Of a stretch of 64,000 nt of DNA, positions 5,684 through 61,782 are shown piece by piece. The notes below the pieces were generated by a model that worked only from the letters and a program-made list of their open reading frames with translations, was not told the DNA's origin and ran no database searches. Every line of letters begins with the position of its first letter. Position 1 is the first letter of the stretch. Source of the stretch: Ranitomeya imitator (Eukaryota); the NCBI RefSeq assembly GCF_032444005.1, contig NC_091283.1, positions 420,422,001 through 420,486,000 of the forward strand. Direction: 5' to 3'. The position numbers and the translations under genes are program-made.

Positions 5684-5705
5684 ATCGCTTCTCGGCCTTT
5701 TGGCT
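5684..5705 (+). ncRNA. RNU2: U2 snRNA 5' fragment (nt 1-22)
   Basis: ATCGCTTCTCGGCCTTTTGGCT, then diverged. Confidence 0.95.
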
Positions 5706-5850
5706 CAGATATCACGTCTGGCCAGAAGGATTCTAAGCCAATCTTGCCCTTGGCCTTGAGGCATCGGCGGTGTAAAAGCCGTCTTAAGCCTCATGCTGCT
5801 TTAGGGGGCAGATACGCAAAGAAACCAGGAAGGCGATCGACCCTTTGAAG

Positions 5851-12074: not shown

Positions 12075-12284
12075 GCGATCGATCAGTTTAACTGTGAGAT
12101 TGTAGTCAGGTCGGGTGCTTTCGGTACCCTCTCTCTCGGCCTGGGGGGATCGCTCCTCTTCGGAGGGGCTTCACCCCCCTGCTGCTATAGGGAGAGAGGA
12201 TTAGTCCGGAGCAACGAGTTGCGATCGCCTTAAAAGGGCGCTAGCCTTTTTTTGTGTTTACAGCTGGAGTTCTTTCTCGGAAGG

Positions 12285-18829: not shown

Positions 18830-18865
18830 ATCGCTTCTCGGCCTTTTGGCTAAGATCAAGTGTAG
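18830..18865 (+). ncRNA. RNU2: U2 snRNA 5' fragment (nt 1-36)
   Basis: Exact to ...AAGATCAAGTGTAG. Confidence 0.95.
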
Positions 18866-19107
18866 GATTTTCTTGCATTTGGTCGAAGTCCTTTAGGTGC
18901 CTGGGGTACCCCGCCTCTCGGCCTTGGGTGCGGGTCCCACTCTTGTAGTGGGATCCAATCCCTTGTTGCTATAGGGAGGTGGGCTTAGTCCCTAGGCAAC
19001 GAGTTGCGATCGCCCTAGCCAGGTAGTCTTTGGATTACTTGGTGCCCTTCTTTGTTGCGGAACACTCCCGTTTGTTGCGGAACACCCCCGTTTTTTTCCT
19101 TATAACC

Positions 19108-20619: not shown

Positions 20620-23600
20620 ATGGCGGGGATCTCTGGAATATCCCTCAACGTTAGAGGGATTAAAACAAAACCCAGGAGGTTGGCGCTCTTTGAGTTTTTG
20701 TACACTTTGTCGGCATCAGTTATCTTCTTACAGGAATGCAATATTCCACACTCTTTAAATTATAATAAGTATAAAACAGATTGGACACATGGACCCTCAG
20801 TGTGGTCAGGATCAAATGAATCCAGGTCAGCAGGGGTCGCCATTCTTTTTAAAGGTAATGTTTTTATTGACTCAGTTCAGGAGGTTTTACCAGGCAGGAT
20901 TTTATTGGTTAAAGCTTTTATTGATGGTTTTAAATGGCAGTTTTTAAATTTTTATGGATCTACTGAGAAAAATGAAAGAGCAAAAATGTTAGAAATGTTA
21001 CCCCTTTTTATTAATGATTCTGATCCTCTTATTTTAGCAGGTGATTTTAATTGTATTATGGGTGGGGAGAAAAGATTCTCCAATGCGGTAAGCAGAAACT
21101 ACGATAAAACCTCTTTTATGCTCAGAAACATTGTGCAGGATTTTAAACTTATCGATTGTTTTAAGGAATGCAATATGAATCTCCCTGCTGAAGAGTGGGT
21201 AACCTGGAGCAATGTGAACTGTAGCTCCAGAATTGATTTTATTTTTTGTTCTAATTCCATACTGCCTTTTAAATGTGAGCTTTTAACCAATGTCTTTTCA
21301 GACCATAAACTTTTACTTTTTAATGTTAATTATGATGATTTTAAGAAAAAAGGTAAAGGTGCCTGGAAACTAAATGTCTCTCTCTTAGATGATCCAGAAA
21401 TTTTAACCAGTTTTACGGAATTTTATACAAATTGCAAACAAACTAGAGATCCCCGTACCCCTATTAGTAGGTGGTGGGAAAAAATGAAGAAAAATATTAA
21501 AAATTTCTTTATTAAAGCTGGAGTACAAAAAGCTAAAGAAAAGAGAGAGAGTTACAACCTCCTAAATACCCGACTGCAAACCCTCTATAAACTACGTGAG
21601 CACGACATTGATGTGGATAAAGATATTTGTAATCTTAAAACTGAAATATCAAGATGCTTGGAACAAAGGGGGAAGCAATTAATCTTTCACTCAAAAGTCA
21701 AGCATATAGAAGAGAATGAAACCTGTTCCCGTTATTTCTTTAAAAATATGGTCGGAAAAAGGGTATTTATTAATTCTTTGGAGGGAGAAAATGAAATAGA
21801 GGGAATTTTAAATAAAGTCCACCAATTTTATGCTGACCTTTTTAATAAAAAAGTTATAGACAATAGTTTTATGGAAAGCTCTATGGAAGAAATCACAACC
21901 ATTTTAGACCCAGTGTCACAAAACTTTTTATTGCAGGACCTGAGCAAGGAAGAGGTGGCTGAAACAGTGAAAAGTTTTAAACCAGGAAAAGTCCCCGGGC
22001 CAGACGGTATCCCCATAGAATTTTATTCCAGTTTTTATGAGCTTTTACAAGAAGATCTTTTAAATATTTTAAGTGAGGTTTTTAATACAAAAACTCTCCC
22101 CACCTCTTGGAAAAAGGGTGAGGTTTCCCTTATATACAAAAAAGGGGACAAAACGGACATAAAAAATTGGAGACCAATAACCCTTTTAAACTGTGACTAT
22201 AAAATAATGGCCAAAATTTGTGCAAACAGACTCAAAAAAGTGGTGGGAAACATAATACATCCTAACCAGGTCTGTGGTATACCAGAGAGAAGCATATGGG
22301 AAAACCTAAATTTAATTAAAGACATAATTGATGACACTAAATCAAGGGGAGGTGGAATGGCGGTCTTATCCCTTGATTTTGAGAAAGCTTTTGATAGAGT
22401 ATCTCACGAGTTCCTTTTTAATGTTTTAAATAAAATGGGTATACCAGAAGGGTTTTTAGAGTCACTTAAGGCATTTTATAAAGACTGCACAAGCAAGATT
22501 GTGATAAATGGTTTTAAAACTAAAGACGTTGTTTTAAAATCTGGGGTTAAGCAGGGTTGTCCCCTGTCCCCACTTTTATTTATTTGTGCTCTTGAACCCC
22601 TGCTATGTGCCCTGAGGAGGGATAAACAAATCCGGGGAATCCCACTGCCTGGTGGAGGAGGTCTGGAGGCTAAAGTCACAGGGTATATGGATGATGTAGC
22701 CATAATATGCAGGGATTCTCCTTCTATACAAAAAGCCTTAAGGCAGGTGGAGTTTTTCTGCTGTGGGTCTGGTTTTAAATTAAATTTTAATAAAAGTTCT
22801 ATTTTTAAGGTTGGCAATGTGGTTTTAACAGATATCCAAGTTCCTGAGAGGGACTCTGTTCAAGTTTTAGGTGTAATTTTTAATGAAGAAAATAAAGGCA
22901 CAGAAAGCTGGAATATGGTGGCTCAGAAGGTAAACCAAAAGCTGTGTATGTGGAATTTGAGAAAAATGACTATGGAGGGGAAAATTTTAATTATTAAAAT
23001 GGTCATATTGCCGCTTTTATTATATTTAAGCCTGGTCTTCCCCCCTCCAAACGGCATTTTTAACAAAATAATTAAAGCTTGTTTTACCTTTTATTGGAGT
23101 TCCAAGATGGAAAAACTAAAGAGAGAGCTGGTGGTAAAATCCAAAGGTAATGGTGGCAAAGACTTCCCAGATTTTAGAGCTTTTGTTTTAATCCGTTTCT
23201 TTGTCCTGTGTTTTAATTCCCTTTTTAAAAATAGTTACTGGTCATATTTTATACGTTTTAACATTGGTTTTTTTATGAGACGCCTTGGGTGGTTTGAAAC
23301 AGTTTTAAATTCCCCATATGCTTTTAACACACCCGAAAACTATAAAATCTTAGGTACCATTGTTAACACATATGACCTAAAGGGTATAAACACAGAGGCC
23401 CTAGGGGATAGCAAAAAGATCCTAAAGGGCCTCAAAGGAAAAGAACAAGTGACGCAGATTGGAAACTTTAATGATCCTAAGTGTTTAGAGATTTGGAAAA
23501 ATGTTAATGCCTCGTATCTTTTTAATTCCCAGAAGGACCTGGCCTGGAGCTGTGTGCATGATTGTCTTCCATGCCGGGCATTCCAGCACCGAAGAGGACT

Positions 23601-24003
23601 CGTGAGATCCGCCAAGTGCCCAAGAGAGGACTGCCAAAGGGAAGAAACAGTGCTGCACATTCTTTGGACTTGTCAATTCACAAGACAAATATGGACAAAA
23701 TTTTTCCCTTTACTCCAGAAAATAACTGATTTGAAAGACTTAAGTTTTGAGACTGTTTTGTTTGGATGCATGGAATGCCCCAACGCAACTAAGAGGATCA
23801 TCGCATGGAAGACAATCAGCACCATCAAAGAAGCTCTATGGAAGGCCAGGAACATCCTTCTTTTTAAACATGATGTTTTATCTGTGAAAGACGTTTTATC
23901 ATTGGCTTTTAGTGAAAGGTATATTTATTATTTATTGGACAAGAAAAAGAATCTTTTATTGTCAAAGCAATGGATGGTAGAAGAGTGGAATACTATAATT
24001 TGA
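20620..24003 (+). CDS. E4 ORF2 APE-RT-CCHC (1127 aa, intact)
   Basis: All APE and RT motifs present, GYMDD. Confidence 0.97.
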   Translation: MAGISGISLNVRGIKTKPRRLALFEFLYTLSASVIFLQECNIPHSLNYNKYKTDWTHGPSVWSGSNESRSAGVAILFKGNVFIDSVQEVLPGRILLVKAFIDGFKWQFLNFYGSTEKNERAKMLEMLPLFINDSDPLILAGDFNCIMGGEKRFSNAVSRNYDKTSFMLRNIVQDFKLIDCFKECNMNLPAEEWVTWSNVNCSSRIDFIFCSNSILPFKCELLTNVFSDHKLLLFNVNYDDFKKKGKGAWKLNVSLLDDPEILTSFTEFYTNCKQTRDPRTPISRWWEKMKKNIKNFFIKAGVQKAKEKRESYNLLNTRLQTLYKLREHDIDVDKDICNLKTEISRCLEQRGKQLIFHSKVKHIEENETCSRYFFKNMVGKRVFINSLEGENEIEGILNKVHQFYADLFNKKVIDNSFMESSMEEITTILDPVSQNFLLQDLSKEEVAETVKSFKPGKVPGPDGIPIEFYSSFYELLQEDLLNILSEVFNTKTLPTSWKKGEVSLIYKKGDKTDIKNWRPITLLNCDYKIMAKICANRLKKVVGNIIHPNQVCGIPERSIWENLNLIKDIIDDTKSRGGGMAVLSLDFEKAFDRVSHEFLFNVLNKMGIPEGFLESLKAFYKDCTSKIVINGFKTKDVVLKSGVKQGCPLSPLLFICALEPLLCALRRDKQIRGIPLPGGGGLEAKVTGYMDDVAIICRDSPSIQKALRQVEFFCCGSGFKLNFNKSSIFKVGNVVLTDIQVPERDSVQVLGVIFNEENKGTESWNMVAQKVNQKLCMWNLRKMTMEGKILIIKMVILPLLLYLSLVFPPPNGIFNKIIKACFTFYWSSKMEKLKRELVVKSKGNGGKDFPDFRAFVLIRFFVLCFNSLFKNSYWSYFIRFNIGFFMRRLGWFETVLNSPYAFNTPENYKILGTIVNTYDLKGINTEALGDSKKILKGLKGKEQVTQIGNFNDPKCLEIWKNVNASYLFNSQKDLAWSCVHDCLPCRAFQHRRGLVRSAKCPREDCQREETVLHILWTCQFTRQIWTKFFPLLQKITDLKDLSFETVLFGCMECPNATKRIIAWKTISTIKEALWKARNILLFKHDVLSVKDVLSLAFSERYIYYLLDKKKNLLLSKQWMVEEWNTII

Positions 24004-24222
24004 ACGCTACCATAAATGTAAATTATTGGCCGATGCTTGTATATTACTTGTTTTTACTGCATGTAACTTTGGAATGAAAAAAAAAAAAAAAAAATCTGAT
24101 TGATATGTTATAAATGCTTTAAATATGTAATACACTGTATACATACGTCTTTTATCTGTAATTGCTTTTAAAACTTTAATAAACGGGTGTACCTAAATGT
24201 GGGTACTTCCAAGTTAAAAAAA

Positions 24223-24373
24223 ATCTGTTCTTATCAGTTTAATATCTGATACGTCCCCTATTTGGGGACCATATATTAAATGGATTTTTAGAACAGGGAG
24301 CTGGAAATGGAGCTTGCTCTGTCCACTCCACGCATTGACCCGATATTGCAGTATCTTCGGGAACAGTGCACCC
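24223..24373 (+). ncRNA. RNU2: U2 snRNA 3' fragment (nt 38-188)
   Basis: Variant B sequence. Confidence 0.97.
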
Positions 24374-25396
24374 CTTCTCTGATCCGGTTTCTAAAAACAG
24401 ATTGAATTGAATTGAAATCAGCAGAGCAAGTTGTCATTTAACCCTTTCGGAGAATTCTTTTCAGGGTCAAAGAAGCACGTTTCAGATGGCAAATGTAGCA
24501 ATTTGCTCAATTTCACTGGACCGTTTGCAACATTTCCTGTGCCTTGCTTTCACCTGTGCATGTTCAGCATTGGATTGCATCCAATATGCAATCAATCAAG
24601 CAATCAAGCAATCTTTGCTGGTTGCAACAGGTGTGTTTAGATGTAGGCCCGAATGAGGCCTTTGTAGCAGTGTTGCTAATATATTGTGCCATCTACAAAA
24701 TTAGGCCCCTGCTGTCTGTCTGTCTGTCTGTCTGTCAGTATGAAGTGTTTAAATTGAAGTATCCTACGAGTAGTTCGGCCATACATACTACATTTGTGAC
24801 CGCATGCACAAATTCCTTTGTAAAACATTGGCTCCCTCTTGTGGACCACAGACTTTTAATTATGTGGTGTATGATATGTATTTAAATAAAGAAGGAAAAA
24901 TGGGGTGGGTCTGTGATGATCTTGCTTGAATGTGCTAGTCTTGTCCATCTTGTCTTGCACTGTGTGAGTAGTATTCTAATGCTTTTGACCAATTAGGTGC
25001 GCTGCTGCTGCCTGCAGTAGATAGAATCTGTGCACGGAACCTTCACCTGCTGTCACAATGGGGCCTTCAGCCATTGACTCCGGAACTCTCACGTGTCACA
25101 ATGGGCTCTGGACCTATCTAAGGCAGAGAAAAATGGTGCCGTCTTCAGTCTGCTGCTGGAGCAGCAGCAGACCACATGGTAGGGGGATTGTCTGTCTGTG
25201 CCCAGCTTCAGGGCAGCTGGCAAGACAACTGCTAGCCCGTCTGGTGTTTGAATTACACACTCGCTCTGCCCGTTTCTTGAATAGCCCTCTTTACCTTGAC
25301 AAGTCAGCTGGTATGTCACTCTCCATCCATCAGGAGGAACGTTACCCCTTAGACCCCAGTCCAGTGCCTCTCACTTAGCCAAATCAGTTCTCTTGC

Positions 25397-25441
25397 TTCG
25401 CACTGACGAGGGCCAAGAGCCCTAAACACTGTGTCTGCGAA
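25397..25441 (+). ncRNA. Hammerhead fold, G12U
   Basis: As 18451-18495; loop III CTG. Confidence 0.72.
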
Positions 25442-25546
25442 TTGAGATGCTGTTGTTTTTTGTTTTTTTTTGTAAAGGGGCAATTTGTAGACCTGCACTA
25501 ATAGTTGCACTCTTTAGCGCAAAAGGGATGGAGGGTGTGTTCAAAT

Positions 25547-25785
25547 GGGCGGAGTTATGCAGATTAGGCAGAGTTATGCAGATTTCAAAAACGCGTTGGG
25601 CCCAACTTGAACACACCCCCACACACCCCCCACACACCCCCACACACACCAGAACTGCCATTTGAGAAGGCATCCAGAGTTTAGAAAAAAATGTCTTCCC
25701 CTGGGCAATCATCTTTTGGCCTCTCTCCACAGTGGGTCTTGGTTGCAGGCCATGGGGCGTCCGGAGTGGCAAACCATTTCAGGCT
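25547..25785 (+). promoter_or_regulatory. U2 promoter (DSE + PSE)
   Basis: Copy of 18601-18829. Confidence 0.85.
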
Positions 25786-25819
25786 ATCGCTTCTCGGCCT
25801 TTTGGCTCAGATCAAGTGT
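25786..25819 (+). ncRNA. RNU2: U2 snRNA 5' fragment (nt 1-34, A23C)
   Basis: ...GGCTCAGATCAAGTGT. Confidence 0.93.
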
Positions 25820-25946
25820 CTGACCAGGAGGTTCTTTGAGTGCTGTCCCTCGGCCTTCTGGCATCGCCACTTCGGTGGCTTAAGCCAGATGCTGCTATAG
25901 GGGGATAGTGAGGAAGGAACGAGAAGGCGATCCTTGAGGCGTGACT

Positions 25947-27259
25947 ATGGGAGTCAAGCTGCAATTCGCTGGGACCGGGATCCCCGGGTCAAGAATGGAT
26001 TCCGGATTGAGGTCGCTGAAGAGAAGAAGGGACACTTCTCCCTGTCCTACTTGGTGAATGCCATCTTCTATGATGCCTTGAAGATAAAGAAGTCGGATAT
26101 CGTTTGCCTGCAAGAGTTTCGGAGAGATGGAAGGTATGTGCTGGTTCTTTCTACTATGGCTGCTTGCCAAAACCTGTTCAGAACTTTGACTGGCTTGAAA
26201 GAGAGCACCCTTCTGGATGGACTTATCTTCACTGTACTTTATTCTAAGGGGGATGTCCCAGTGGTTGTGTTCATGCACAATCCTTTTTGCTCCCAGGATA
26301 GTATCACTGCTTTCCTGAGGAGGCATTGTGTTTTTGTGCAGTTCTCCCACAGGATAAATAATGAGGAGGGCCTGTGGACGGGAAAATACAAATACTTTGT
26401 TAGGTTTGCGGTGGACCCCCAGGGACCAGGGGGTATTCACTATCCGCCTATGAGTTTTACAATCGGAAGAGATACTGGCTTCTTGTATTTCCCTGATGCT
26501 CCTTTCTTTTGTAGAAGGTGTAGCACTTATGGCCATATCCAAGAGTCCTGCAGTAGTCAGCCAACCTGCAGGAGGTGTAATGAGACCGGTCACATAGCGA
26601 GAGATTGTAAAAACCAGGTGAAGTGTGATGCGTGTGGTGAGGATGGACATGTCCTTCGGGAGTGTCGGGCCAGAACCACACCTAGGTCCTTTGCACAAGT
26701 GACCGCGGTCAGGCCTGCTACTCCAGCTGTGGTTGCTGAAGCTCCAGTGAGTTCCCTAGCAGATATCGGGGAGGCAGTTGCTTCCAGAGAGGAAGAGGAG
26801 TCACCTCTCCCTTTCCAGTTTGGTGCCCGTGCAACTACAGATAGTGTTGTTCTGGTGCCTGCTAAAAAAACTAAAAAAAAGTATGGGAATCTGGGTTTGG
26901 AGAAAGCTTTGGTAAAAGCATTAAAGAATGTGCAAAGAGGCTTTTCAAGTGCTGAAGGAGGGGAGCGCCCGGACACCCTGCAGTTGCAGGACGCTGAAGA
27001 GGGCGCGGAATGTATGGAGACTTCTGTACATCTTTCAGATCCGGAGTATATTGAAGAGTTTTGTTCTGATGATGGTGGTGAGAGTGGAAAGCATCACGGA
27101 GGAGGTAGTGGGGAAAGTGACCGAGAAAAGGAGGATGTGGCACCTCAGAGAAAAGCAGGTGTCAAGAAATCAAGGTGGAGTGAGAGTGGAGAGGCCAGCG
27201 GGTCGGAAACCAGCCACTCGTTGCAGATGGTAGAGGATGATGGTGGAGGAACTGGCTAA
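25947..27259 (+). pseudogene. E5 ORF1 with -1 frameshift at G-run 25977-25979
   Basis: E6 has GGGG at this site and an open frame from the same ATG. Confidence 0.85.
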
Positions 27260-32514: not shown

Positions 32515-32548
32515 ATCGCTTCTCGGCCTTTTGGCTCAGATCAAGTGT
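32515..32548 (+). ncRNA. RNU2: U2 snRNA 5' fragment (nt 1-34, A23C)
   Basis: Same junction as E5. Confidence 0.93.
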
Positions 32549-32675
32549 CTGACCAGGAGGTTCTTTGAGTGCTGTCCCTCGGCCTTCTGGCATCGCCACT
32601 TCGGTGGCTTAAGCCAGATGCTGCTATAGGGGGATAGTGAGGAAGGAACGAGAAGGCGATCCTTGAGGCGTGACT

Positions 32676-33989
32676 ATGGGAGTCAAGCTGCAATTCGCTG
32701 GGACCGGGGATCCCCGGGTCAAGAATGGATTCCGGATTGAGGTCGCTGAAGAGAAGAAGGGACACTTCTCCCTGTCCTACTTGGTGAATGCCATCTTCTA
32801 TGATGCCTTGAAGATAAAGAAGTCGGATATCGTTTGCCTGCAAGAGTTTCGGAGAGATGGAAGGTATGTGCTGGTTCTTTCTACTATGGCTGCTTGCCAA
32901 AACCTGTTCAGAACTTTGACTGGCTTGAAAGAGAGCACCCTTCTGGATGGACTTATCTTCACTGTACTTTATTCTAAGGGGGATGTCCCAGTGGTTGTGT
33001 TCATGCACAATCCTTTTTGCTCCCAGGATAGTATCACTGCTTTCCTGAGGAGGCATTGTGTTTTTGTGCAGTTCTCCCACAGGATAAATAATGAGGAGGG
33101 CCTGTGGACGGGAAAATACAAATACTTTGTTAGGTTTGCGGTGGACCCCCAGGGACCAGGGGGTATTCACTATCCGCCTATGAGTTTTACAATCGGAAGA
33201 GATACTGGCTTCTTGTATTTCCCTGATGCTCCTTTCTTTTGTAGAAGGTGTAGCACTTATGGCCATATCCAAGAGTCCTGCAGTAGTCAGCCAACCTGCA
33301 GGAGGTGTAATGAGACCGGTCACATAGCGAGAGATTGTAAAAACCAGGTGAAGTGTGATGCGTGTGGTGAGGATGGACATGTCCTTCGGGAGTGTCGGGC
33401 CAGAACCACACCTAGGTCCTTTGCACAAGTGACCGCGGTCAGGCCTGCTACTCCAGCTGTGGTTGCTGAAGCTCCAGTGAGTTCCCTAGCAGATATCGGG
33501 GAGGCAGTCGCTTCCAGAGAGGAAGAGGAGTCACCTCTCCCTTTCCAGTTTGGTGCCCGTGCAACTACAGATAGTGTTGTTCTGGTGCCTGCTAAAAAAA
33601 CTAAAAAAAAGTATGGGAATCTGGGTTTGGAGAAAGCTTTGGTAAAAGCATTAAAGAATGTGCAAAGAGGCTTTTCAAGTGCTGAAGGAGGGGAGCGCCC
33701 GGACACCCTGCAGTTGCAGGACGCTGAAGAGGGCGCGGAATGTATGGAGACTTCTGTACATCTTTCAGATCCGGAGTATATTGAAGAGTTTTGTTCTGAT
33801 GATGGTGGTGAGAGTGGAAAGCATCACGGAGGAGGTAGTGGGGAAAGTGACGGAGAAAAGGAGGATGTGGCACCTCAGAGAAAAGCAGGTGTCAAGAAAT
33901 CAAGGTGGAGTGAGAGTGGAGAGGCCAGCGGGTCGGAAACCAGCCACTCGTTGCAGATGGTAGAGGATGATGGTGGAGGAACTGGCTAA
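32676..33989 (+). CDS. E6 ORF1 zinc-knuckle protein (intact)
   Basis: CRRCSTYGH, CRRCNETGH, CDACGEDGH. Confidence 0.9.
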   Translation: MGVKLQFAGTGDPRVKNGFRIEVAEEKKGHFSLSYLVNAIFYDALKIKKSDIVCLQEFRRDGRYVLVLSTMAACQNLFRTLTGLKESTLLDGLIFTVLYSKGDVPVVVFMHNPFCSQDSITAFLRRHCVFVQFSHRINNEEGLWTGKYKYFVRFAVDPQGPGGIHYPPMSFTIGRDTGFLYFPDAPFFCRRCSTYGHIQESCSSQPTCRRCNETGHIARDCKNQVKCDACGEDGHVLRECRARTTPRSFAQVTAVRPATPAVVAEAPVSSLADIGEAVASREEEESPLPFQFGARATTDSVVLVPAKKTKKKYGNLGLEKALVKALKNVQRGFSSAEGGERPDTLQLQDAEEGAECMETSVHLSDPEYIEEFCSDDGGESGKHHGGGSGESDGEKEDVAPQRKAGVKKSRWSESGEASGSETSHSLQMVEDDGGGTG

Positions 33990-39264: not shown

Positions 39265-39366
39265 GCGATCTTGTGTCGCGGTCAGGGGGTGCGAGTGATT
39301 CCTGGCAGCGTGCTGCTGATTTGCTACTGCGGTCTTTGTACCGGCAGAGAAGATTGAAGAGAGAAG

Positions 39367-45975: not shown

Positions 45976-46012
45976 ATCGCTTCTCGGCCTTTTGGCTAAG
46001 ATCAGGTGTAGT
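45976..46012 (+). ncRNA. RNU2: U2 snRNA 5' fragment (nt 1-37, A30G)
   Basis: ...AAGATCAGGTGTAGT. Confidence 0.95.
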
Positions 46013-46217
46013 GACCATATAGTTGCTGCCCTGGTCTTGACTGGAAGGTGCCTGGGGTACCCGGCTCCTTGGCCTGGGGGGATTGTCTCACTTATGGTGG
46101 GACTTCACCCCCCTGCTGCTATTAGGGAGCTGGATTAGTCCCCAGGCAACGAGTCGCGATCCCCCGGCGTAAGGCCGAGCCCGTCTTCACGGCAAGCCTT
46201 AAGCCAAAACTGCTGCG

Positions 46218-54635: not shown

Positions 54636-54671
54636 ATCGCTTCTCGGCCTTTTGGCTAAGATCAAGTGTAG
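54636..54671 (+). ncRNA. RNU2: U2 snRNA 5' fragment (nt 1-36)
   Basis: Same junction as E4. Confidence 0.95.
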
Positions 54672-54894
54672 GATTTTCTTGCATTTGGTCGAAGTCCTTT
54701 AGGTGCCTGGGGTACCCCGCCTCTCGGCCTTGGGTGCGGGTCCCACTCTTGTAGTGGGATCCAATCCCTTGTTGCTATAGGGAGGTGGGCTTAGTCCCTA
54801 GGCAACGAGTTGCGATCGCCCTAGCCAGATAGTCTTTGGATTACTTGGTGCCTTTCCTTGTTGCGGAACACCCCCGTTTTTTTTCCTTATAACC

Positions 54895-61568: not shown

Positions 61569-61782
61569 ACGATCTGTAGTGGATTGTGGCATTAGGCTAA
61601 TGGTGTGTGTAGTGAAAGTTCTGATTCTTGGCCTCGTGGAGATATCCCTTGCTGCTATTGGGAGTCGGTTTGGAAGCTGCAGTACCTTTTTTCCCGGAGG
61701 ACGGTGTGTTGGAGGTGGACCCGATCTGTGGAGGCTGCGATCGAATTGCTTGTTCCAGTGTAATCTGTGACCAAGAAGAAGA

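What the first reader, a model, noticed from the sequence alone, without database searches (positions are those of the whole stretch)
25920..25931. Each 5' UTR carries an antisense copy of the U2 5' end, mimicking U2/U6 helix II
Seen: CGAGAAGGCGAT in E5/E6 (25920, 32649), CCAGGAAGGCGAT in E2 (5825), CGAGTTGCGAT in E3/E4/E9 (12215, 19000, 54806), CGAGTCGCGAT in E8 (46150), GAGAAG twice beside the E7 ATG, and a weaker GCGAT in E10 (61737). All can pair with U2 nt 1-12 (ATCGCTTCTCGG) upstream of ORF1. E3 and E7 also turn U2 nt 23-27 into GCGAT. Known: this U2 segment forms helix II with U6. Inference: the transcript starts at U2 +1 and folds back to hide its U2 5' end, closing the UTR into one domain and avoiding spliceosomal interference.
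Basis: partly seen in the sequence, partly recalled or inferred. Interest (0 to 1): 0.7.

Follow-up and report, generated by a model that had tools for sequence, protein, structure and literature searches.

The report
Jumping gene pairs with U2 start
Jumping genes that live only inside frog and fish U2 RNA genes carry a short, long-conserved stretch that can zip up with the first 5-11 letters of the U2 piece at the head of their own RNA; this is new for this family but resembles a trick known from the R2 jumping gene.

Summary
Every motif sits at the stated coordinates. GCGATC occurs 13 times on the + strand of the window, 10 of them in the 1,962 nt of 5' UTR.

The elements are Keno-type (Tx1 clade) non-LTR retrotransposons. 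They split all nine U2 genes whose 5' junction lies in the window after about nt 34.

Taken copy by copy, the complementarity to U2 nt 1-12 is no better than chance. The comparative evidence is strong:
- I fetched 9 further Keno 5' junctions: Ascaphus, Xenopus tropicalis, X. laevis, mudskipper and marine metagenomes.
- All carry a strand facing U2 nt 1-5, usually nt 1-11.
- The strand sits in different places: right after U2 stem-loop I, before the conserved UTR fold, between two copies of that fold, or after it.
- Partners opposite U2's U positions vary A/G. Partners opposite its C positions are G in 45 of 48 cases, which is a wobble signature.
- Thermodynamic models form the helix in 13 of 16 lineages.

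The fold-back helix is therefore probably real and selected. Avoidance of the spliceosome is untested. The closest analogue is the R2 ribozyme P1 stem, built from upstream 28S sequence. The scan has already noted the neighbouring UTR fold (s1-294677).

The parts
25786..25796 (+). E5: U2-derived leader nt 1-11, 5' strand of closing helix H1 (the leader runs to about 25819)
   Evidence: Rfam U2 partial hit 25786-25851. Pair probabilities 0.60-0.97 with 25920-25931.
25920..25931 (+). E5: H1 3' strand CGAGAAGGCGAT (the finding)
   Evidence: 5 bp, a bulged G, then 6 bp with U2 nt 1-11.
32515..32525 (+). E6: leader nt 1-11
32649..32660 (+). E6: H1 3' strand, identical to E5
5684..5695 (+). E2: leader nt 1-12
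5825..5837 (+). E2: H1 3' strand CCAGGAAGGCGAT
   Evidence: Pair probabilities 0.49-0.99.
18830..18840 (+). E4: leader nt 1-11.
19000..19010 (+). E4: H1 3' strand CGAGTTGCGAT
   Evidence: P about 1.0 for nt 1-5 and 8-11.
54636..54646 (+). E9: leader nt 1-11
54806..54816 (+). E9: H1 3' strand CGAGTTGCGAT
45976..45986 (+). E8: leader nt 1-11
46150..46160 (+). E8: H1 3' strand CGAGTCGCGAT
   Evidence: P 0.68-1.0.
12215..12225 (+). E3: distal motif CGAGTTGCGAT. The helix is not favoured in the model (P 0.03).
12075..12080 (+). E3: proximal GCGATC replacing U2 nt 23-28. In the model it pairs inside arm A.
39265..39270 (+). E7: proximal GCGATC replacing U2 nt 23-28
39347..39366 (+). E7: two GAGAAG copies beside the ATG. 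The second pairs with U2 nt 5-10 in the model (P 0.78), but this is not above the permutation controls.
61737..61742 (+). E10: GCGATC, weak candidate partner (P 0.27)
25797..25832 (+). E5: arm A. Leader nt 12-27 pair with the junction and the first element nucleotides (nt 33-47 from U2 +1), in place of native U2 stem-loop I.
   Evidence: MFE. The same arrangement, with different sequences, is seen in E2, E4, E8, AscA-C and the Xenopus copies.
25557..25785 (+). U2 promoter upstream of E5: two octamer-like ATGCAGAT at -229 and -210, and a conserved block at -65..-50
   Evidence: Conserved in all nine units.
24216..24376 (+). U2 3' part, from about nt 39, that follows the poly(A) of E4. It defines the insertion site.
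   Evidence: The site agrees with PMC4640811.

Best explanation
The window is a U2 snRNA gene array. Each of the nine units whose 5' junction lies in the window is split after about nt 34 by a sense-oriented Keno-type (Tx1-clade, APE + RT) non-LTR retrotransposon.

The element RNA most likely starts at U2 +1, driven by the host U2 promoter, and so carries a 34-nt U2 leader. This start is inferred, not shown.

Each element encodes a purine-rich strand with consensus AAC-GRGRAG(G)CGAU-C. This strand pairs with leader nt 1-11 (helix H1), and at least with nt 1-5. In frogs, the first nucleotides of the element also pair with leader nt 12-34 (arm A). The whole host-derived leader is therefore buried in helices. 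In this genome's main families, H1 also closes the conserved UTR fold into one three-way-junction domain.

Shown here: the complementarity, its conservation across frogs, a fish and marine animals, its movable position, a wobble-type substitution pattern, and thermodynamic support.

Inferred function: a stable 5' module that keeps the leader intact. The cDNA then ends in U2 complement, anneals to the target, and rebuilds a precise promoter-leader junction. This is the role proposed for 28S sequence on R2 RNA. Masking of U2 identity may add to this.
For: Identity of the elements:
- Domains from Pfam.
- Insertion site and poly(A), matching the Keno/Utopia site at U2 nt 39.

Motif:
- Coordinates and a roughly 25-fold enrichment in the UTRs.
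- H1 is predicted with P > 0.6 in E2, E4/9, E5/6, E8 and the TARA lineage. It is also predicted in AscB and AscC, in AscA at P 0.4-0.6, in XtA, XtB and Xl, and in L007/L008 and the mudskipper.
- The isolated domain from nt 1 to the motif folds with its two ends paired in 13 of 13 lineages tested, z -2 to -8.7.
- Permutation of nt 1-11: Fisher p 3e-7 over 16 lineages.

Position of the strand relative to the conserved fold differs between lineages. AscC has a 66-nt UTR that is essentially one leader hairpin.

Partner table: opposite U2's U positions 28 A and 13 G; opposite its C positions G in 45 of 48.

Age: the ORF1 tree interleaves the window's families with those of Ascaphus and Xenopus, so the feature is old.

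Promoter conserved in all units.

Analogy: PMC3774820 and PMC11331408.
Against: - The 5' end of the RNA is unproven.
- Per copy, the duplex is no better than chance.
- The U2 side is invariant, so true covariation cannot be seen.
- E3/E4/E8/E9 keep a 2x2 mismatch in the middle of the helix. No family has the perfect complement.
- E7 and E10 are not supported. In E3 the model prefers an ATG-proximal partner.
- The conserved C after GCGAU and the AA before the strand are not explained by pairing alone.
- A cap-proximal helix would be expected to hinder cap-dependent translation. This rests on established knowledge and was not tested.
- A U1-targeting relative shows no comparable 5' pairing.
Confidence: 0.62

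Rival explanations
1. The helix exists to hide the U2 5' end (the helix II strand) from U6 and the splicing or snRNP machinery, so that the chimeric RNA does not act as a U2 decoy or get trapped. This is compatible with the structural claim above. It differs only in what selection acts on.
For: In frogs the whole leader, nt 1-34, is sequestered, not only its end. The U2 nucleotides involved are those that form helix II with U6 (established knowledge).
Against: Nothing here bears on U6 or on spliceosome contact. The marine and fish lineages keep native stem-loop I and cover only nt 1-5, which would leave most of the helix II strand free.
Confidence: 0.2
2. The motif is conserved for another reason, and its complementarity to the leader is incidental. 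Possible reasons are a protein-binding site for ORF1p, ORF2p or a host factor, a translation signal, or a DNA-level site (CGATCG is palindromic).
For: The duplex energy per copy is within chance. The flanking AA and C are conserved without a pairing role. CGATCG or a G.U-compatible form occurs in several lineages. A central mismatch persists in E3/E4/E8/E9.
Against: G is kept exactly opposite the four C positions of U2 nt 1-11, while purines opposite U vary A/G. The palindrome is broken in E5, E7, E8, AscA, XtA, XtB and Xl. The motif moves relative to every other UTR landmark yet always faces the 5' end.
Confidence: 0.13
3. H1 is the P1 stem of a self-cleaving (HDV-like or new) ribozyme. It would cut read-through transcripts of the tandem array exactly at U2 +1, as R2 does in 28S.
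For: The logic is the same as in R2: the target-derived 5' strand pairs with an element strand that can lie 23 to more than 700 nt away. The array is tandem, so read-through is plausible.
Against: There was no ribozyme family hit in 23900-26000 at E <= 1. There is no short P3/L3 hairpin directly upstream of the strand, only a long closing helix. AscC has a 66-nt UTR with no room for a catalytic core. An intact snRNA promoter already defines +1. An earlier agent found no sign of self-cleavage in the adjacent fold (s1-294677, which I did not re-test).
Confidence: 0.05
4. The motif pairs with the AUCG(C) of the internal loop of the conserved UTR fold, or with itself in a second RNA (dimerisation), rather than with the 5' end.
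For: AUCGC is present in the fold of E3, E5/E6, AscA and AscB, with close variants in E2 and E8. GCGAUCGC is self-complementary in E3, E4/9, the mudskipper and L007.
Against: AscC has no such fold. E4/E9 and Xl lack AUCGC in it. The complementarity extends to leader nt 6-11, which the internal copy lacks except in AscB. The G after AUC belongs to a covarying apical stem.
Confidence: 0.05

Closest known systems
R2 retrotransposon 5' HDV-like ribozyme whose P1 stem uses upstream 28S rRNA sequence (PMC3774820)
   Same: Both are site-specific non-LTR elements co-transcribed with their target gene. In both, the 5'-terminal target-derived nucleotides pair with an element-encoded strand at a variable distance, and that stem cannot covary because the host side is fixed. 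In both, the retained target sequence is proposed to let the cDNA anneal to the target and give uniform 5' junctions.
   Different: R2 is an RLE element in Pol I rDNA, and its 5' end is made by self-cleavage. Keno is an APE element of the Tx1 clade behind a Pol II snRNA promoter. No ribozyme core was found. The helix is longer (up to 11 bp), and in frogs it is joined by a second arm that covers the rest of the leader.
Keno (Tx1 clade) U2 snRNA gene-specific non-LTR retrotransposons (PMC4640811, PMC4494074)
   Same: APE + RT ORF2, and ORF1 with ZCCHC3-like RNA-binding domains. Sense insertion, with the 3' flank starting at U2 nt 39. Reported from frogs, fish, lancelet and hydra.
   Different: The papers I could read describe targets and phylogeny. 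They do not describe a 5' UTR structure or pairing with the U2 leader.
U2/U6 helix II of the spliceosome
   Same: The same U2 nucleotides (about 1-11) are engaged. The element strand therefore resembles the U6 strand.
   Different: The helix here is intramolecular, on a roughly 5.5-kb chimeric RNA. The resemblance follows from complementarity. No evidence of competition with U6 was obtained.
Stable 5' modules of R2 PRINT templates (PMC11331408)
   Same: A thermodynamically stable fold at the template 5' end improves insertion, apparently by protecting the 5' end. Precise junctions form when the cDNA 3' end anneals to the upstream target.
   Different: That is an engineered system with ribozyme folds. 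For Keno this is only an analogy.

Membership tests
Keno (U2-specific Tx1-clade non-LTR retrotransposon) | ORF2 with an apurinic/apyrimidinic-type endonuclease and a reverse transcriptase | tested here: met
   Pfam Exo_endo_phos, RVT_1 and zf-RVT in the ORF2 at 20620-24003.
Keno (U2-specific Tx1-clade non-LTR retrotransposon) | Insertion in U2 snRNA genes at the shared Keno/Utopia site, with the 3' flank starting at U2 nt 39 | tested here: met
   Poly(A) is followed by U2 from about nt 39 at 24216. The same junction is seen in the mudskipper, Ascaphus and L007.
Keno (U2-specific Tx1-clade non-LTR retrotransposon) | RT phylogeny placing it with reference Keno sequences | not tested
   No Repbase references were available. 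The best database relatives are X. tropicalis RT proteins at 47-48% identity.
HDV-like self-cleaving ribozyme (R2 type) | P1 formed by the 5'-terminal nucleotides and a downstream P1' strand | tested here: inconclusive
   H1 has this form. The +1 nucleotide is A, and cleavage is unknown.
HDV-like self-cleaving ribozyme (R2 type) | P3/L3 hairpin immediately upstream of P1', with P1.1 and P2 forming a nested double pseudoknot | tested here: not met
   A long closing helix and an AA junction precede the strand. AscC has no room for them. No Rfam ribozyme hit at E <= 1.
HDV-like self-cleaving ribozyme (R2 type) | Self-cleavage at the base of P1 | not testable with these tools
   This needs in vitro transcription and cleavage assays.
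U2/U6 helix II mimic | A strand complementary to U2 nt 1-11 | tested here: met
   9-11 pairs, with one bulge or mismatch, in most frog lineages.
U2/U6 helix II mimic | Functional competition with U6 for the U2-derived leader | not testable with these tools
   This needs pull-down or crosslinking experiments.

The most novel reading that the evidence does not exclude
Keno RNA is an snRNA-promoter-driven, capped U2-LINE chimera, and the element has evolved a complete 'anti-leader' (H1 plus arm A). This masks all 34 U2 nucleotides from U6 and the snRNP pathway. It may also toggle between two states: a closed template state and an open state in which ATG-proximal GAAG..AUG sequences pair with the leader instead, as seen as alternatives in E3, E7 and AscA. 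The toggle would partition the RNA between translation and reverse transcription.
Probability: 0.15. Interest if true: 0.75.

Novelty: new variant of a known kind. Interest (0 to 1): 0.58.

Why it matters
It would show that an APE-type, Pol II snRNA-promoter-dependent LINE uses the same principle as R2. The element keeps a piece of the host target on its RNA and builds that piece into its own 5' structure. It has done so since before the frog lineages sampled here split, and in fish and marine animals as well.

It gives a concrete, mutable helix for testing three things:
- how site-specific LINEs make exact 5' junctions;
- how a 5.5-kb RNA can be made from an snRNA promoter;
- whether a host-RNA-derived leader has to be masked.

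It also defines a compact 5' module (66 nt in Ascaphus family C) that could inform RNA-templated insertion designs.

Tried and rejected
- RNAduplex of U2 nt 1-12 against each UTR, compared with permuted 12-mers and dinucleotide shuffles. Not significant per copy, so duplex energy alone was dropped as an argument.
The RNA 5' end therefore remains unverified.
- Logan contigs L001 and L002, the best ORF2 hits. They are polyadenylated Tx1-like transcripts without a U2 leader and were not informative.
- Ranitomeya and Hyla loci could not be fetched because the files were too large.
- HDV-like ribozyme reading: rejected for lack of P3/L3 and because of AscC.
- Palindrome or dimer reading, and the internal AUCGC partner: rejected as general explanations.
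- Generality to a U1-targeting relative (L006): no 5'-end pairing.
- Mapping substitutions on the ORF1 tree was abandoned. UTR motif type and ORF1 clade disagree (E2 groups with E3 by ORF1 but with E5 by motif), which suggests recombination.

Full report
**What the window is**

Rfam finds nine U2 snRNA matches on the + strand, spaced 6.4-8.5 kb apart. Their alignment shows that only U2 from about nt 39 onward is real there. It is preceded by a poly(A) tract.

The first 22 nt of U2 occur nine times elsewhere, about 1.4 kb downstream of each 3' part. Each is followed, after about nt 34, by a 5' UTR, an ORF1 and an ORF2. ORF1 has ZCCHC3-type RNA-binding domains, with or without a zinc knuckle. 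ORF2 has an APE endonuclease, a reverse transcriptase and zf-RVT.

So each of the nine U2 units whose 5' junction lies in this window is split by a sense-oriented non-LTR retrotransposon. The site is the one described for Keno and Utopia, with the 3' flank beginning at U2 nt 39 (PMC4640811). Keno is a Tx1-clade family known from frogs, fish, lancelet and hydra.

**The observation**

All motif strings are at the coordinates given. GCGATC occurs 13 times on the + strand of the window. Ten of these lie in the 1,962 nt between U2 +1 and the ORF1 ATGs.

The pairing with U2 nt 1-11 is imperfect:
- E5/E6: 5 bp, a bulged G, then 6 bp.
- E3/E4/E8/E9: 5 bp, a 2x2 mismatch, then 4 bp.
- E2: 5 + 4 bp.

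E3 and E7 do carry GCGATC in place of U2 nt 23-28.

Copy by copy, this is not more than chance. Permuted 12-mers of the same composition find equally good partners in these G+C-rich UTRs (p 0.02-0.84).

**Relatives**

Protein searches, contig look-ups and one metagenome scan gave further Keno 5' junctions:

| Source | Locus |
|---|---|
| Marine TARA contigs | L003/L004 |
| Mudskipper U2 array | L005 |
| Two metagenome contigs | L007/L008 |
| Ascaphus truei, three families | L087 |
| Xenopus tropicalis, two families | L088 |
| X. laevis | L089 |

Every one carries a strand facing the leader's first nucleotides:
- In L003 and L007/L008, GCGGU or GCGAU follows U2 nt 26 by two nucleotides and extends native stem-loop I by 5 bp.
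- In the mudskipper it lies at +61.
- In Ascaphus A it lies before the conserved UTR fold.
- In Ascaphus B it lies between two copies of that fold and makes 11 contiguous pairs.
- In Ascaphus C the whole 66-nt UTR is one hairpin made of the leader and its element-encoded complement, with no conserved fold at all.
- In Xenopus and in the window's main families it lies after the fold.

The strand therefore moves relative to every other landmark but always faces the 5' end.

**Substitution pattern**

Across 12 frog variants, the partners opposite the four U positions of U2 nt 1-11 are 28 A and 13 G. Partners opposite the four C positions are G in 45 of 48 cases.

X. laevis and the TARA lineage have GCGGU, a wobble-compatible change. 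This is what a plus-strand RNA helix against a fixed partner predicts. It would not hold for the complementary DNA strand.

The lineages are related, and UTR and ORF1 histories disagree. I therefore give counts and not a formal event test.

**Thermodynamics**

- H1 has pair probabilities above 0.6 in E2, E4/E9, E5/E6, E8, AscB, AscC, XtA, XtB, Xl, TARA and L007/L008.
- It is about 0.4-0.6 in AscA and the mudskipper, 0.27 in E10, and near 0 in E3 and E7.
- The isolated domain from nt 1 to the end of the strand folds with its two ends paired in all 13 lineages tested, with z-scores from -2.0 to -8.7.
- Replacing nt 1-11 by permutations lowers their pairing in most lineages. The combined p is about 3e-7 over 16 lineages, which are not independent. 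Eleven of the 16 have p <= 0.06.

**The rest of the leader**

In frogs, nt 12-34 pair with the first 15-40 nt of the element (arm A) in place of native stem-loop I. Each family uses different element sequences.

The leader also carries family-specific changes in nt 22-34 that create pairs. Examples are A23C in E2/E5 and A30G in E8. The leader therefore evolves with the element and is part of the transposed unit.

All nine units keep two octamer-like motifs at -200 to -260 and an identical block at -65 to -50. This is the layout of a vertebrate snRNA promoter according to established knowledge. Together these points make a start at U2 +1 likely. They do not prove it.

**RNA evidence**

I could get none. 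From then on I sent no leader letters to any search tool.

**Mechanism**

Shown: a conserved, relocatable, wobble-tolerant complement of the leader's 5' end.

Inferred: it forms helix H1 in the RNA. With arm A it buries the host-derived leader. In this genome it closes a three-way junction that holds the conserved fold.

The most likely role, by analogy with R2, is a stable 5' module. It would preserve the leader so that the cDNA 3' end anneals to the target and rebuilds an exact promoter-leader junction. The R2 analogy rests on two papers. In PMC3774820 the P1 stem is built from upstream 28S, and the retained 28S sequence is proposed to give uniform junctions. PMC11331408 shows that stable 5' folds improve insertion.

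It fits less well with lineages that cover only nt 1-5.

**Rivals**

- An incidental motif is disfavoured by the position-specific G/R pattern.
- A DNA palindrome or RNA dimer site is disfavoured because the palindrome is broken in seven lineages.
- An internal AUCGC partner fails for AscC, E4/E9 and Xl.
- A ribozyme P1 fails the P3/L3 test and has no Rfam support.
- A U1-targeting relative (L006) shows no comparable pairing, so the device is not a general rule for snRNA-targeting Tx1 elements.

**Novelty**

Two literature searches found no description of a Keno 5' UTR structure. I rate this as a new variant of a known kind: target-derived 5' sequence built into the element's RNA structure.

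The scan had already noted the neighbouring conserved fold (s1-294677), the junctions (s1-295128) and the promoter (s1-295326) on this same window.

Noticed in passing
L006:98-400 and L006:5400-5545: A Tx1-clade element in a TARA marine metagenome contig is inserted in a U1 snRNA gene. U1 nt 1-38 lie upstream, and the U1 3' part follows the A-rich tail. The 2015 Utopia paper lists no non-LTR element that targets U1.
   Followed up: partly
L003:2360-2372; L007:250-262; L008:245-257: The 5' UTRs of the marine Keno lineages contain consensus 5' splice sites (GGTAAGT), followed by T-rich tracts ending in TTTTAG before ORF1. This suggests an intron in the UTR of an snRNA-promoter-driven element.
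   Followed up: no
window 25850-25870; L087:12190-12225: The conserved UTR fold contains segments that look like the U2 leader itself: CTYGGCCTT resembles U2 nt 8-16, and it is followed by ATCGC(TTCC), which resembles U2 nt 1-9. The resemblance is clearest in Ascaphus family B. The fold may descend from a duplicated leader.
   Followed up: no
window 25947-26060 versus 32676-32790: E5 lacks one G that E6 has (GGGACCGGGATCC versus GGGACCGGGGATCC). From its ATG, E5's ORF1 stops after 36 codons, while E6 reads on. Their UTRs are identical.
   Followed up: partly
window, all families; L087, L088, L089: The ORF1 tree interleaves the window's families with those of Ascaphus and Xenopus (three clades with support 90-96). 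Several Keno lineages therefore seem older than the frog radiation. E2 groups with E3 by ORF1 but with E5 by UTR motif, which hints at recombination between families.
   Followed up: partly
window 61569-61590 and 61715-61742: The E10 UTR repeats a leader-junction-like segment: CGATCTGTAGTGGA near the junction and CGATCTGTGGAGG just before its GCGATC. This suggests an internal duplication of the 5' region.
   Followed up: no
L088:4621, 7794; L089:7790: In Xenopus the nucleotide before U2 +1 is G. In the model it pairs with the conserved C that follows the motif (P about 1.0 when the G is included). In the poison frog and Ascaphus C it is T. The conserved C remains unexplained.
   Followed up: partly
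window 1-64000; L087:1678; L005:15479-22528: All nine U2 units whose 5' junction lies in this window are interrupted. The Ascaphus and mudskipper arrays still hold intact U2 genes beside their Keno copies.
   Followed up: no
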